Part shown: positions 2,187-6,689 of the stretch, in pieces
Position numbering within the stretch: the first letter of the stretch is position 1
How the letters are laid out: each line of letters begins with the position of its first letter
Assembly: GCF_947568905.1 (NCBI RefSeq)
Contig: NC_079173.1
Coordinates: 29,636,001 to 29,700,000 of the forward strand
Direction of reading: 5' to 3'
DNA: 64,000 bases
DNA from: Ostrea edulis
Lineage: Eukaryota
Translations under genes and position numbers: made by a program
The notes under the pieces: generated by a model
What the model was told of the DNA's origin: nothing
What the model saw: only the letters and a program-made list of their open reading frames with translations
The model's database searches: none

Positions 2187-5100
2187 GTAAGAAGCTTGAT
2201 GTTGTTGAGGCGTCTACGGTCCAGATAACATTAATATTCCCAACAGTACTAATTTAGATTATTTTCTATGTGAAGAAAGTAGTAAAAATATTTCAAAATT
2301 GATTATAGTAATTCAGTTAGAAACAGTGAAATTGCAAACTTTCTAAACAGTCAAAGGTTGGTGAAATTGTACTCGAGACACTTGACAGCTGAGGAATATT
2401 CAAGGTATTTTTTACTGAGCTAGATTATTTTTTGATAGGTAAAAAGATTTCCTAAATGTGTATGATCGTACTATGATTTTGTATCATGATTGATGTACAA
2501 GGGGCCTGATTGATGGCTGAATCACACACGTGCGTCCCTCAGATATTCAGAATTCTCAAGTTATTTCTGATCATAATCATGTGATAACATGATTTTGTAG
2601 AGAAATTTCAAGACCCTGGTAAATACAAGTTTAGTATTGCAGTGCTGTGATGCATTGAGACATAATGCGGCTCTGAAAACATTTGGGAGTTTATTATTGC
2701 AAGCATAACCAGCATTGTTCTGACAGATACAAGTTCAGCATTTTTTTTTTTTTTTACACCAACTGCCAAAATATTTGCAACTTTTGGGGTTCTTCCACAC
2801 CTGAATAAAATTTACAAACTTGTACCTGCTCAGGTATTTACCTGGTTTTGTGTGGGTGTTCATGTGCTCCATTTTATAATTCTTGAGTGAATTTTGTGCT
2901 TACTAAATGTGGAAACTATCTAACAAATGTTACTTAATATTTCCAGGTGTTTATACTGTTATATAATTCAATATGTGCTCATGCAGCCATATTTATTTGG
3001 ACCAATGATGTTTAATATATCAGACTTATTAAACTACAAATGTAGTATGTATGTAAACAGGGTCAATATTGTACTAATGACAGGGTGACCAGCTGTTTGT
3101 GGATAACTAATAGAATCAGATTCAATGTTTATACCAGAACCAGGTTCAATGTTTTCAAATATTTGACAAGCTAGTTATTGAAATGACACCCAGGGTTTTT
3201 AGTTTTAATTTTGACAGTTTTTGTTTTAGAAATTTTAAAAATAGAAACTTAAATGTCCATCACATGATTTCTGGAAATTGTAACTTATAATTTGTCCATT
3301 ACATGTTTTCTACATGTATGTTAATTGCGTTTTGTTCAAATTTATAATTTCCATAAAGAATTTCATTTGAAGTACAATACAACATACGTATAATAGCAAT
3401 CCTCCAAGGCCAGCAAAAAACTGTTTGATGTATCCAATAAAATTTTCGTTATTTTTCCTCTCATTTGGGAATAAATATCATTTGGCAATAAGCAATATTA
3501 TTATAAACTATTTCGTCATAAGTACTTATGGCGAAATAGTTTATAATATTGCTTATTGCCAAATGATTTATCATGAAATTATAGTTTATGATATTGCTTA
3601 TTGCCAAATGATATTTATTCCTTATGATGAAATTATAGTTTATAATATTGCTTATTGCCAAATGATATTTATTCCTTATGACGAAATTATAGCTTATAAT
3701 ATTGCTTATTGCCAAATGATATTTATTCCCAAATTCCCATGTTTTACTGTGTAGAAAAGTAGACAGTGGCTGCAGTTGTTGTCTTTTCAACTATATTCAT
3801 TTTACAACTGTAACAGGAAGGGAGAAAATGTAACAGACCAGACCCTGATTCAAACCCGGACCCACTAAATCTCTAGTCAGGTGCTCTACCAACTGAACTA
3901 TCTCTTCACAGGCGATCAAACCTGGCTGACCGTTACATTTCCCTCTCCTTAAATGTCTTCACGCTTGAAGACCTTAATCTTCTGACAGGCATTTTCACCT
4001 GTCACTTTCAGGGGCTGGTCTACGGCACCAAATGTATCAGGAAGGGAGAAAATGCAACGGACTAGACCGGGATTGAATAATGATGCACTATTGATGCTCC
4101 ACAAACAATTTGGTCACCCTATTGTCATATGTTTAATTCGTATTATAATGTATATCTTTGAAAATTATTGAACATGTATTCTGATTAACACAGTGGGTTT
4201 TGTTATATAAATCAATACATGCTAATACTCTAAGCTAATGTATTATCTTAACTTTGAAAATATACATATCTCTCTGTAAGGATCATATTAAAGGAGGTTG
4301 GACTATAACAGTGGATTTTGGCCCTGAAATAAATCCTTGGATCAGCATACATAAAACAGTTTTAAGTTAGTACACGTACAGTGTATCCCCTACCTTAAGA
4401 CCAAAGCTCTGGATTTCCCTACTCCTAGCTGTCTCAAAGATTAATTTGCTATTAATTCCTCCTTTTTTGTTTTTTTTTTGTTATCTAGATCAAAAAATCC
4501 AGAGCAACATTTTTGTCTTGGGAAGCAGAACAGTTTGTTCAAAAAAGCTCTAAAAAAAATGGGGGGGGGGGGATAATTGTATAAAAGCACCTTGATGAGC
4601 ACCTTTATTGTTTAAAAGGTTGACATGGGGGACATAATGCAAGAAATTAATAAATTAGGTCTTAGAATCTGTCACTGCAGTCTCAATATATTCTTTGTGC
4701 TACTTTGAATAAAGTATTGAAATGTTAACAATAAAAATTGGTACAATTTATTTCTGGTACAAAAGTATTGTTTTGCACTGTTTGCAGTGTTTAATATAAA
4801 GCTTATTGAAGGTGTACAATGAATGAAACAGATCAGTGTTTTCTGTGTGTGCTGTTTGATAACTTGAGGTGGTTCTCTGATTTTAGATGTCGATTTGCTA
4901 AGAGATACAGTGGACCAATACCATAAGTCCGGCTACTGTCAAGCTGGCTTCTCAGTAGCCATGGCAGCTGTAAGTCTGGCCAGAACGCTTCATTGCAAAA
5001 TCATTTGTCAATTTGTGCACAACAGTTTGAAAGAACACAATCATCAGTTTTCAAAGAACACAATTATCACTTTTGAAATTAGTCCAAATATATGTTAAAA

Positions 5101-6689
5101 GTCCACCAACACCTTCCTTCCAAAACAAGCAGATGATTATTTGTTCATTTATCTTTTGCATGATGTTTCTTTATTTCATTTATTCATTGAATGTGTTTTG
5201 CATGGATTGGACATGTTGGAAAAAGCATGCTCTTATTAATAAGTATTACTAATGCACAGAAGTAGATAATGTACAGATACAAAATAAACACTGGGTGACT
5301 GTCGTAATTGTAGTTAAGGTACTAATACTACATCATAACGGTCATTCAGGGCTTCACATTGAAACTGAAGGAAGCCTATAATAGTAATCACTTTGTCTGT
5401 CTGTCTGTATGTACTCAGTGTTAATGGTCTAAAGTCCTACAAGAGCTTTCAAAAGCTCAGTTATTGCCCTTACAATTCATTATTATTTATATACTTGTAC
5501 CTTTGTTAAGTGATATATAAGAAATACATGTGTAGATACAGTGTATATCCGTATATATAGATAAAATGAAATGAAGATGACTAATGCACAGTATAATGTA
5601 ATTTTAAAAAAGCATGAAAATACACCACCACCCCCAAAAAATCCCCCACAAATTTCATACCTGTTTTTTCAAAGTTTAGATTTTGATATAAAAGTATGTT
5701 TAGCTTATGATAAATTTAAGAGGAACAGCTCTGATTACAGAATTCAGGTCAACTGGTCAAGGTCACAAAGACGTACTAATTAAGTTTATAATCAAATAAC
5801 TAATGGAGTAACTTTTAGTTGTAAAATTTCAATGAACGATTACTGATAATTTACCAGTACTTAAGAGTCTCCTATGTATATTTTTAAATTGGTGATAACC
5901 ACAAAATTATTAGTTGAGTAAATCTTCAATATTAAAATTAAAACAGACCAAAATAATTGTTGGCAATTTAGCCATCAGAATGAAGGTACAATTGAATTAA
6001 CAGAATCTGTAAGTTTTGGGTTAATAGCTGTGTGCAATAATTGAAGATCTCTGGTAATTGTATTGCACAATCATGAAAAAAACCCAGTATTTAACAGAGA
6101 AGGTGACTTCTGTTGAGATGTATAGATTAAGTATTTAAAGTTTTGTTTTAGCAGTCTTTGTTTTGAATGTATGATTCATACTTTAAAGCATCACTTGAAA
6201 CATCTGGCCATGCCAAACCCAATATATGTACGTTCTGATTGAAAGTGCAAAACATTACATTTGCACTCTTCTAATATTTTGATATATCTATTTTAGTTAG
6301 AGTTTATATATATATGTTTGTAGATGTTGTTTTAAAAGTGTCTTGTTTTTTTGTTTTGATTTTTCATAATCTGAAATTGTTTTTCCCTGCAGCATACAGC
6401 TTGGTGTTTTGCATTTAGTGATAAACTGGTTTTTGATTACAGATGGCATAAGTAGTCTAATGTTATGGGGCTATCATCGAGTCGGATTTTGTCAGGCAGG
6501 GATGTCTGCCACGTTTTCAAATGTGAGTCTCATCACTTGTATTGTATAAAGCTGTTTACGTTGCGTCATACTCCAACTTCTTTTGTCATTGTAGCGTAAT
6601 TATTAGGTGTAAGAACTTCTTGTTAAGTGCCTGAATTCCTGGGGATAGGAAAAACCCATTGAGACAGATCAATAATAATCATCATTTAT

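What the first reader, a model, noticed from the sequence alone, without database searches (positions are those of the whole stretch)
4887..6522. Frame-enforced mutually exclusive exons in the integrin alpha propeller
Two paralogous exons (83 and 80 nt; ...YHKSGYCQAGFS... vs ...YHRVGFCQAGMS...) lie between the phase-1 exon ending at 2186 and the phase-0 exon starting at 11295. Each is phase 1-0 with canonical splice sites and an open frame. Including both or neither shifts the frame, so exactly one must be used. Mutually exclusive propeller exons are known in vertebrate alpha6/alpha7 (X1/X2), but those lie one blade later; this pair covers the blade 2-3 loop. I know of no description of this in a mollusc, though I could not search.
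Basis: partly seen in the sequence, partly recalled or inferred. Interest (0 to 1): 0.88.

Follow-up and report, generated by a model that had tools for sequence, protein, structure and literature searches.

The report
Alternative ligand-loop exons in oyster integrin
The flat oyster's RGD-type integrin alpha gene has two interchangeable copies of the exon that builds a ligand-contacting loop. The switch is real and very old, is already in public annotation and was shown by RT-PCR in abalone in 2026. What is new here is a conserved long-range RNA pairing that loops out the second copy.

Summary
Exon A (4887-4969, 83 nt) and exon B (6443-6522, 80 nt) are paralogous, phase 1-0, AG/GT-flanked exons of the Ostrea edulis "integrin alpha-8-like" gene, an alphaPS2/alphaV-clade subunit.

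RefSeq already lists eight isoforms of this gene. They are a 2x2x2 set: A or B, with or without an 18-nt micro-exon (2601-2618), and with or without a 30-nt cassette (20808-20837). Every model carries exactly one of A and B.

The same A/B alternatives are annotated in other oysters, scallops, clams and snails (abalone has three variants) and in a nemertean. Lingula and Pinctada have an intact but unannotated B exon. A 2026 paper (PMC13170236) showed a mutually exclusive "exon 5" in abalone ITGA8 by RT-PCR and minigene, so the phenomenon is not new for molluscs.

- B is the ancestral alphaPS2-type loop (WGYHRQG). A (VD..DQYH) was seen only in lophotrochozoans.
- Both exons are under purifying selection (dN/dS about 0.07-0.11).
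- A 19-22 bp RNA helix is conserved in three oyster genera. It joins a site about 50-60 nt downstream of exon A to a site about 100-150 nt upstream of exon 6 and loops out exon B.

The exons encode the propeller II-III loop that holds alphaV Asp150. This is not the alpha6/alpha7 X1/X2 site.

Other notes from this scan list further mutually exclusive exon candidates in this genome, none of them in an integrin.

The parts
2066..2186 (+). Constitutive exon 4 (ACAPRY...SPCRG), ends in phase 1
   Evidence: It is the fourth coding exon in Saccostrea echinata (L002).
2601..2618 (+). 18-nt cassette micro-exon, phase 1-1. It replaces the junction Asn with K-KFQDP-D and so lengthens the same loop by 6 residues. 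It combines with either A or B.
   Evidence: Found, splice sites (ttttgtag|AGA..CTG|gtaaat). Present in RefSeq isoforms X1, X2, X5 and X6. Conserved with its splice sites in Saccostrea and C. virginica.
2883..2932 (+). Conserved intronic block ('block 3') carrying UACUAAA and UCUAAC motifs; role unknown
   Evidence: blastn and alignment across three oyster genera. No positionally conserved pairing partner was found.
4887..4969 (+). Exon 5A (class A, VD..DQYH loop), 83 nt, phase 1-0
   Evidence: Carried by RefSeq isoforms X1, X3, X5 and X7. dN/dS about 0.08 where dS was not saturated.
5019..5040 (+). E1a: 5' arm of the long-range RNA helix, 50 nt downstream of the exon A donor
5049..5063 (+). 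E1b: partial tandem second copy of E1, seen only in O. edulis
6443..6522 (+). Exon 5B (class B, WGYH loop, the ancestral alphaPS2 type), 80 nt, phase 1-0
   Evidence: Carried by RefSeq isoforms X2, X4, X6 and X8. dN/dS 0.07-0.11.
11175..11196 (+). E2: 3' arm of the long-range RNA helix, ending 98 nt upstream of exon 6
11295..11343 (+). Constitutive exon 6 (NGSRILIGAPGAFYWQ-G), starts in phase 0

Best explanation
The window holds most of the Ostrea edulis orthologue of the RGD-type integrin alpha subunit (alphaPS2 / pat-2 / alphaV-alpha5-alpha8 clade; RefSeq name 'integrin alpha-8-like'). Its fifth coding exon exists as two tandem paralogues, A and B, and each mRNA carries exactly one.

Shown:
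- Both exons have intact splice sites and phase. Both are used in annotated isoforms of this and many other species, and both are under purifying selection.
- The A/B pair predates the bivalve-gastropod split. It is also present in a brachiopod and a nemertean.
- B is the ancestral form shared with arthropod alphaPS2.
- Including both exons, or neither, breaks the reading frame.
- In Ostreidae a 19-22 bp helix (predicted -27 to -33 kcal/mol) can form between E1, just downstream of exon A, and E2, about 100-150 nt upstream of exon 6.

Inferred:
- The E1:E2 helix loops out exon B and brings the exon A donor next to the exon 6 acceptor. A is then spliced to exon 6 without B. If exon 4 (or the micro-exon) is joined to B first, before E2 is transcribed or when the helix is prevented, the B form results. 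Frame-shifted products that escape are removed by nonsense-mediated decay.
- The exons encode the Cys-Cys loop between propeller blades II and III, the loop that carries alphaV Asp150, which contacts the Arg of RGD. A supplies an acidic, polar N-terminal half of the loop (VDLLRDTVDQ). B supplies a hydrophobic, Trp-containing half (GISSLMLWG).
- The 18-nt micro-exon lengthens the loop by 6 residues. Together these give four ligand-face variants from one gene, which most likely differ in ligand preference or affinity.
For: - Sequence and frames.
- Species and isoforms: tblastn at 100% identity to O. edulis XP_ isoforms, and the 2x2x2 isoform set.
- A and B alternatives annotated in C. virginica, M. 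gigas, C. angulata, two Saccostrea species, three scallops, Mya, Mercenaria, Biomphalaria, Pomacea, Haliotis, Patella (two A-type variants only) and Lineus.
- Genomic tandem order A then B, in the same phase, in Saccostrea echinata, S. cucullata, C. virginica, Lineus, Lingula (B unannotated) and Pinctada (B unannotated).
- It is the fifth coding exon, which matches abalone 'exon 5' shown by RT-PCR and minigene.
- Purifying selection on both exons.
- Clade and loop assignment: Pfam domains on record and best solved relatives alphaV and alpha5. In the HMMER alignment, alphaV C142-C155 with D150 falls in the alternative segment. Asp150 contacts the Arg of RGD (PMC11463590).
- RNA helix: E2 is the best partner of E1 in the whole stretch from exon A to exon 6 in each of the three species scanned (z -6.6 to -8.6). 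In S. cucullata the two arms are present at the same relative positions and pair as in S. echinata. The helix is 19-22 bp at homologous positions in four species of three genera. Both arms are islands of conservation in otherwise diverged introns. The 11-mer core occurs in the 64-kb window only at E1a, E1b and, as its complement, at E2.
Against: - No RNA-seq junction counts could be examined. Use of B in O. edulis rests on RefSeq models and on conservation. A search for short spliced exon4-B-exon6 fragments found none. The Logan-derived (probably transcript-length) members read for the M. gigas clusters all carry A, so B may be a minor or tissue-restricted form.
- The helix shows no double compensatory change. 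The arms are simply conserved, with one A-U / G-U / G-G position, so a protein-binding role for each arm separately is not excluded.
- No comparable helix was found in Pinctada, Lingula or Lineus, and no second 'selector' for B was found.
- The alphaV Asp150-equivalent residue is a His in both A and B, so the swap changes neighbouring residues and not that position.
- Identity of the H. gigantea gene with this orthologue is inferred from its name, exon number and the RefSeq isoforms of other abalones. The paper's sequences are held only as images.
Confidence: 0.85

Rival explanations
1. The exon pair is real, but exclusivity comes only from reading frame plus nonsense-mediated decay, and the choice comes from RNA-binding proteins. 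The E1 and E2 elements would then be separate protein-binding enhancers or silencers, or serve general intron processing, and would not act as a helix.
For: There is no double compensatory substitution in the helix. No helix was found in Pinctada, Lingula or Lineus, which keep both exons. A further conserved intronic block carries branch-point / STAR-like motifs. In mouse, QKI controls the Itga7 X1/X2 choice through an intronic ACUAAC site.
Against: Two separate protein sites would not be expected to stay perfectly complementary over 19-22 nt in three genera. E2 is the single best partner of E1, with z down to -8.6. The position tolerates A-U, G-U or a single mismatch while the register is kept.
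Confidence: 0.25
2. One of the two exons, most likely B, is not used in O. edulis, and its isoforms are annotation artefacts carried over from homology.
For: No direct transcript containing B was retrieved. The listed transcript-length Logan-derived proteins of Magallana all carry A.
Against: B is the ancestral form, identical in type to arthropod alphaPS2. It has dN/dS 0.07-0.11 with a dS of about 0.5-1.2 between oyster genera. Its splice sites and phase are intact in six lophotrochozoan genomes. B isoforms are annotated independently in many species. The exclusive pair was shown by RT-PCR in abalone.
Confidence: 0.03
3. A and B do not change ligand specificity. They would instead tune something else, such as pairing with different beta subunits, activation state, folding or surface expression.
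For: The alphaV Asp150-equivalent residue is the same (His) in both exons. In ITGA6 the X1 and X1X2 forms are reported to have similar ligand specificity but different beta requirements.
Against: The variable half of the loop lies on the ligand face, next to residues that contact RGD in alphaV. The title of Humphries et al. 2000, seen in reference lists, states that Trp157 of alpha5 determines the specificity of RGD binding. That Trp157 lies in this same loop is my recollection of the alpha5 sequence and was not checked here. In alpha7, swapping propeller exons changes laminin preference.
Confidence: 0.3

Closest known systems
Abalone (Haliotis gigantea) ITGA8 exon 5-1/5-2 mutually exclusive exons (PMC13170236, 2026)
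   Same: Mollusc integrin 'alpha-8' gene in which the fifth exon, in the beta-propeller, is used in a mutually exclusive way. RefSeq isoforms of H. rufescens and H. cracherodii differ at exactly the segment homologous to oyster A and B.
   Different: Abalones have three variants in RefSeq: two A-type and one B-type. The paper concerns an intron-3 SNP, ILF2 and an exon-skipping isoform. It does not describe deep conservation, the micro-exon or any RNA helix. Gene identity is inferred, because the paper's sequences are images only.
Vertebrate integrin alpha7 / alpha6 X1/X2 alternative propeller exons
   Same: Alternative exons in the integrin alpha propeller that alter the ligand-binding face. 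In alpha7 they are mutually exclusive, change laminin preference and are under splicing-factor (QKI) control.
   Different: They belong to a different clade (laminin-type subunits) and a different site. X1 is I193-L235, after ..NWKG, in the outer part of blade III. The oyster pair encodes the II-III loop upstream of the GAPG..YWQG exon. Biomphalaria has a second exclusive pair at the X1/X2-equivalent exon.
Drosophila/arthropod alphaPS2 cassette (PS2C versus PS2m8)
   Same: Same orthologous gene family, and the alternative splicing also affects the ligand-binding propeller. The named PS2C/PS2m8 literature is my recollection. The cassette itself is visible in arthropod isoforms directly after YWQG.
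   Different: It is an include/skip cassette and lies one exon downstream. The arthropod isoforms read here show only the B-type loop and no A-type alternative.
Long-range RNA pairing in mutually exclusive splicing (Dscam1 docking/selector sites, 14-3-3zeta; vertebrate FGFR2 and ATE1) - from my own knowledge
   Same: Conserved intronic complementary elements loop out the unused alternative exon and bring the chosen exon close to the constitutive exon.
   Different: Only one helix (E1:E2) was found, with no set of competing selectors. It is supported by conservation and predicted energy only, and was seen only in Ostreidae.

Membership tests
Tandem-duplicated mutually exclusive exon pair | Adjacent exons in one intron interval that are homologous to each other | tested here: met
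   A and B lie 1473 nt apart between exons 4 and 6. They are 50% identical over 16 residues and share the YH.xG.CQAG.S frame.
Tandem-duplicated mutually exclusive exon pair | Same phase, similar length, canonical splice sites, open frame | tested here: met
   83 and 80 nt, both phase 1-0, with AG/GT sites. The same holds in Lingula and Lineus.
Tandem-duplicated mutually exclusive exon pair | Mature transcripts contain exactly one of the exons | tested here: met
   Met at the level of annotated and published transcripts. All 8 O. edulis RefSeq isoforms and all orthologue isoforms read carry exactly one, and abalone has RT-PCR and Sanger evidence. Raw junction counts could not be examined.
Frame/NMD-enforced exclusivity | Exon lengths are not multiples of 3, so double inclusion or double skipping creates a premature stop | tested here: met
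   With both exons a TAA falls at codon 3 of B; with neither, a stop falls in exon 7. Decay of such transcripts was not testable.
RNA-structure-guided (docking/selector type) mutually exclusive splicing | Conserved complementary intronic elements positioned to loop out the alternative exon | tested here: met
   The E1:E2 helix is 19-22 bp, -27 to -33 kcal/mol and z -6.6 to -8.6, at homologous positions in 4 species of 3 genera.
RNA-structure-guided (docking/selector type) mutually exclusive splicing | One docking site competed for by a selector at each variant exon | tested here: not met
   E2 has only E1 as a conserved partner, and no selector associated with B was found.
RNA-structure-guided (docking/selector type) mutually exclusive splicing | Covariation, or experimental dependence of exon choice on the pairing | tested here: inconclusive
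   Only one-sided changes were seen (A-U / G-U / one mismatch). No helix was found outside Ostreidae. Experiments are not possible with these tools.
RGD-type (PS2-clade) integrin alpha subunit | FG-GAP propeller without an alphaI domain, thigh and calf Ig domains, a transmembrane helix and a GFFKR-like tail; nearest relatives alphaPS2, alphaV, alpha5, alpha8 | tested here: met
   Pfam PF01839, PF08441, PF20805 and PF20806 are on record for the orthologues. Best solved relatives are alphaV, then alpha5. The transmembrane segment and CGFFRRKRP are in the window. Source names are alpha-8 / PS2 / pat-2.
Vertebrate alpha6/alpha7 X1/X2 site | Alternative segment begins directly after ..NWKG (alpha6 I193-L235) | tested here: not met
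   The oyster alternative segment ends before the GAPG..YWQG exon, whereas X1 starts after it.

The most novel reading that the evidence does not exclude
A switch more than 500 million years old, shared across lophotrochozoans, lets the single RGD-type integrin alpha gene alternate between two ligand loops. One is the ancestral Trp-containing alphaPS2/alpha5-like loop (B). The other is a lineage-specific acidic loop (A), and in oysters a micro-exon adds further length variation. This would give different ligand specificities from one gene, the role that vertebrates fill with separate paralogues (alphaV, alpha5, alpha8, alphaIIb). In oysters the choice would be set by a kilobase-range RNA bridge that loops out exon B.
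Probability: 0.3. Interest if true: 0.65.

Novelty: new member of a known kind. Interest (0 to 1): 0.45.

Why it matters
Oysters appear to have one RGD-type integrin alpha, called Cg-alpha2 in the C. gigas family survey (PMC7390872). That survey links it to haemocyte phagocytosis and encapsulation and does not discuss isoforms.

If A and B differ in ligand preference, then antibody, knock-down and binding experiments on "the" oyster RGD integrin have been averaging at least four receptor forms. The abalone work shows that the isoform balance of this gene has visible tissue-level consequences.

For splicing biology, the E1:E2 helix is a clean, testable case of long-range RNA pairing at a mutually exclusive exon pair outside arthropods and vertebrates. 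I know of few such cases in lophotrochozoans.

For annotation, B-type exons are missing from the Lingula and Pinctada gene models.

Tried and rejected
- **Spliced B fragments.** A search for short protein fragments spanning exon4-B-exon6, as direct transcript evidence, found only 8 hits and none of that kind.
- **Block 3 as a docking site.** The predicted partners fall at different relative positions in each species. A 15-bp pairing 36 nt upstream of exon B exists only in O. edulis.
- **Helices outside oysters.** Unbiased scans for Watson-Crick stems between the A-B intron and the B-exon 6 intron in Pinctada, Lingula and Lineus found nothing above shuffled controls.
- **Extra exon copies.** A third exon-5 copy, or a second exon-7 copy (as in gastropods and Biomphalaria), was looked for in the window and none was found.
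- **Loci that could not be fetched.** The Haliotis rufescens and Pecten maximus genes are too long for the tool. The C. virginica X2, M. gigas X1 and Mya X1 products were not on record.
- **Owenia.** The annelid hit is an intronless retrocopy and is uninformative.
- **Abalone sequences.** The exon sequences in the abalone paper are held only as images.
- **Structure prediction.** None was run, because the tools would not return residue-level geometry relative to a ligand.
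Full report
**What is in the sequence.** The + strand from the start of the window to about 41.8 kb carries an integrin alpha gene. It runs from propeller blade II through the transmembrane segment and a CGFFRRKRP tail. Exon 4 (2066-2186) ends one base into a codon. Exon A (4887-4969, 83 nt) and exon B (6443-6522, 80 nt) each have a polypyrimidine-AG acceptor and a GTAAGT or GTGAGT donor, and each reads from phase 1 to phase 0. Exon 6 (11295-11343) starts in phase 0. 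The two peptides share the frame YH.xG.CQAG.S. They match each other at 50% identity over 16 residues, and no further copy exists in the window. Including both exons gives a TAA at the third codon of B. Including neither gives a stop in exon 7.

**Which gene it is.** A 67-residue FG-GAP exon was searched against 1.8 billion cluster representatives. This returned a full-length relative that maps exon by exon onto the window. Searching with that protein gave named orthologues. The window is 100% identical over most exons to Ostrea edulis "integrin alpha-8-like". The nearest relatives are mollusc alpha-8 / alpha-V / pat-2-like proteins and arthropod alphaPS2. The best solved relatives are alphaV, then alpha5. 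This is therefore the protostome RGD-type (PS2-clade) alpha subunit.

**The pair is already annotated, and the system is richer than reported.** RefSeq lists eight O. edulis isoforms. Aligned, they form an exact 2x2x2 set:
- exon A or exon B;
- presence or absence of six residues (K-KFQDP-D in place of N) directly before the alternative exon;
- presence or absence of ten residues (GGFNSEGSDL) further on.

The six residues come from an 18-nt micro-exon at 2601-2618 (ttttgtag|AG AAA TTT CAA GAC CCT G|gtaaat). It is phase 1-1 and is conserved with its splice sites in Saccostrea and C. virginica. The ten residues come from a 30-nt cassette at 20808-20837. No isoform of any species examined carries both A and B, or neither.

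**Conservation.** A-type and B-type isoforms are annotated in the following:
- other oysters: C. virginica, M. gigas, C. angulata, Saccostrea echinata and S. cucullata;
- three scallops, Mya and Mercenaria;
- the gastropods Biomphalaria, Pomacea (three variants) and Haliotis rufescens and H. cracherodii (three variants); Patella shows two A-type variants;
- the nemertean Lineus longissimus.

In genomic DNA the order is A then B, in the same phase 1-0. This holds in both Saccostrea species, C. virginica and Lineus. It also holds in the brachiopod Lingula and the pearl oyster Pinctada. In those last two species only A is annotated, but an intact B-type exon with good splice sites lies downstream.

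Two classes are clear. Class B (..WG[YF]H[RK]xG.CQAG..) is the form found in all arthropod alphaPS2 proteins read, in a chiton and in an annelid retrocopy, so it is ancestral. Class A (VD.....[DN]Q[YFH]H..) was seen only in molluscs, Lingula and Lineus. The duplication therefore predates the divergence of these lophotrochozoan phyla.

Between oyster genera both exons show dN/dS of about 0.07-0.11, with dS of 0.4 up to saturation. In Saccostrea echinata the alternative exon is the fifth coding exon.

[quoted passage not shown] It supports this with RT-PCR, Sanger sequencing and a minigene holding exons 3, 4, 5-1, 5-2 and 6 (PMC13170236). The sequences are only in figures. The gene name, the exon number, the propeller location and the RefSeq isoforms of other abalones all fit the same exon. 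Full-text searches found no other paper that combines integrin and mutually exclusive exons in invertebrates. The survey of C. gigas integrins does not treat isoforms. The core phenomenon is thus known in a mollusc and annotated in this species. It has not been described for oysters or as a deeply conserved feature.

**Where it sits in the protein.** In the HMMER alignment to alphaV, the alternative segment corresponds to the loop between Cys142 and Cys155 plus the following segment up to the GAPG exon. AlphaV Asp150 lies in this loop and contacts the Arg of RGD ligands (PMC11463590). The Asp150-equivalent residue is a His in both A and B. The exons differ in the N-terminal half of the loop: VDLLRDTVDQ in A (acidic) against GISSLMLWG in B (hydrophobic, with Trp). 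They also differ in the following segment. The oyster loops have 18-19 residues between the cysteines, against 12 in alphaV and arthropod alphaPS2, and the micro-exon adds 6 more.

The title of Humphries et al. 2000, seen in the reference lists, states that Trp157 of alpha5 determines the specificity of RGD binding. That Trp157 lies in this same loop is my recollection of the alpha5 sequence and was not checked here.

The vertebrate alpha6 X1 region is I193-L235, immediately after ..NWKG, in the outer part of blade III (PMC8241838). The arthropod alphaPS2 cassette and a second exclusive pair in Biomphalaria occupy that downstream position. The oyster pair is therefore a distinct site. "One blade later" should read "further along blade III".

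**How the choice may be made.** Comparing the exon 4 to exon 6 interval among O. edulis, Saccostrea and C. virginica shows a few conserved intronic islands. One is E1, which starts 50 nt downstream of the exon A donor in O. edulis and about 60-65 nt downstream in the other oysters. Another is E2, whose paired core begins about 93-149 nt upstream of exon 6. The two are complementary:
- O. edulis: 22 bp with one G-U pair and one mismatch (5019-5040 with 11175-11196);
- both Saccostrea species: 21 contiguous bp;
- C. virginica: 19 contiguous Watson-Crick bp.

Predicted energies are -27 to -33 kcal/mol. In each of the three species scanned, E2 is by far the best partner of E1 anywhere between exon A and exon 6 (z -6.6 to -8.6). 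A 19-nt Watson-Crick stem exceeds every shuffled control, where the maximum was 14. The 11-nt core occurs in the whole window only at E1, at its partial tandem copy E1b (5049-5063) and, as the complement, at E2.

The helix encloses exon B in a loop of 6.1 kb in O. edulis and 2.3-2.7 kb in the other oysters. It places the exon A donor near the exon 6 acceptor. My reading is that it makes A-to-6 splicing bypass B, so that exclusivity is set at the splicing step and frame plus NMD act as a backstop. The B form would arise when exon 4 or the micro-exon is joined to B instead.

This reading is inferred. There is no double compensatory change, no second selector was found, and no equivalent helix was seen in Pinctada, Lingula or Lineus. 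A further conserved block (2883-2932), with UACUAAA and UCUAAC motifs, has no consistent pairing partner and remains unexplained. The QKI control of mouse Itga7 X1/X2 through an intronic ACUAAC site (PMC8860092) makes a STAR-protein site a reasonable guess for it.

**Limits.** I could not inspect RNA-seq. A search for short spliced B-containing fragments found none, and the listed transcript-length Logan-derived proteins of Magallana all carry A. B may therefore be a minor or restricted form in oysters. Its use rests on RefSeq models in many species, on strong purifying selection and on the abalone experiments.

**Verdict.** The pair is not novel as such, because it is annotated here and published for abalone. 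It gains interest from three things: its age, its position in a ligand-contact loop together with a micro-exon, and a conserved long-range RNA helix that offers a directly testable mechanism.

Noticed in passing
window 20808-20837: 30-nt cassette exon (GGFNSEGSDL, cattag|GGC..TTA|gtaagt) between FG-GAP repeats. It is present in RefSeq isoforms X1-X4 and absent in X5-X8.
   Followed up: partly
window 2883-2932: Intronic core of about 50 nt conserved in three oyster genera, carrying UACUAAA and UCUAAC (branch-point / STAR-QKI-like motifs). No conserved pairing partner was found and its function is unknown.
   Followed up: partly
L003 (Lingula anatina) about 11718-11776; L006 (Pinctada imbricata) 19445-19524: Intact B-type alternative exons with splice sites that are missing from the current gene models. 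In the Pinctada copy the Trp is replaced by Tyr.
   Followed up: partly
L004 (Owenia fusiformis) 501-3659: The annelid hit is an intronless copy encoding 1052 residues in one open frame, lying within the range of a kinesin gene. It is a B-type retrocopy of the integrin.
   Followed up: no
Biomphalaria glabrata isoforms P0310 / P0311 / P0312: A second pair of alternative segments (RLFNFRTDNATKPY.. versus QIYQFDAITGNKIW..) directly after GAPG..YWQG. This is the position of the vertebrate alpha6/alpha7 X1/X2 exons and of the arthropod alphaPS2 cassette.
   Followed up: partly
L005 (Lineus longissimus) about 21620-21706: The nemertean A-type exon lacks the second cysteine of the loop (..HHKFGKAMVGMS..), so the Cys-Cys bridge cannot form in that isoform.
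   Followed up: no
L002 (Saccostrea echinata) 6468-6586: Three extra tandem partial copies of the 3' end of exon 3 (ISSGESGQIL at 90% identity), about 45 nt apart, in the intron just after exon 3.
   Followed up: no
window 50715-58733: Downstream of the integrin gene, long open stretches on the + strand include C2H2 zinc-finger repeats (55175-55987, 58293-58733), separated by tandem repeats.
   Followed up: no
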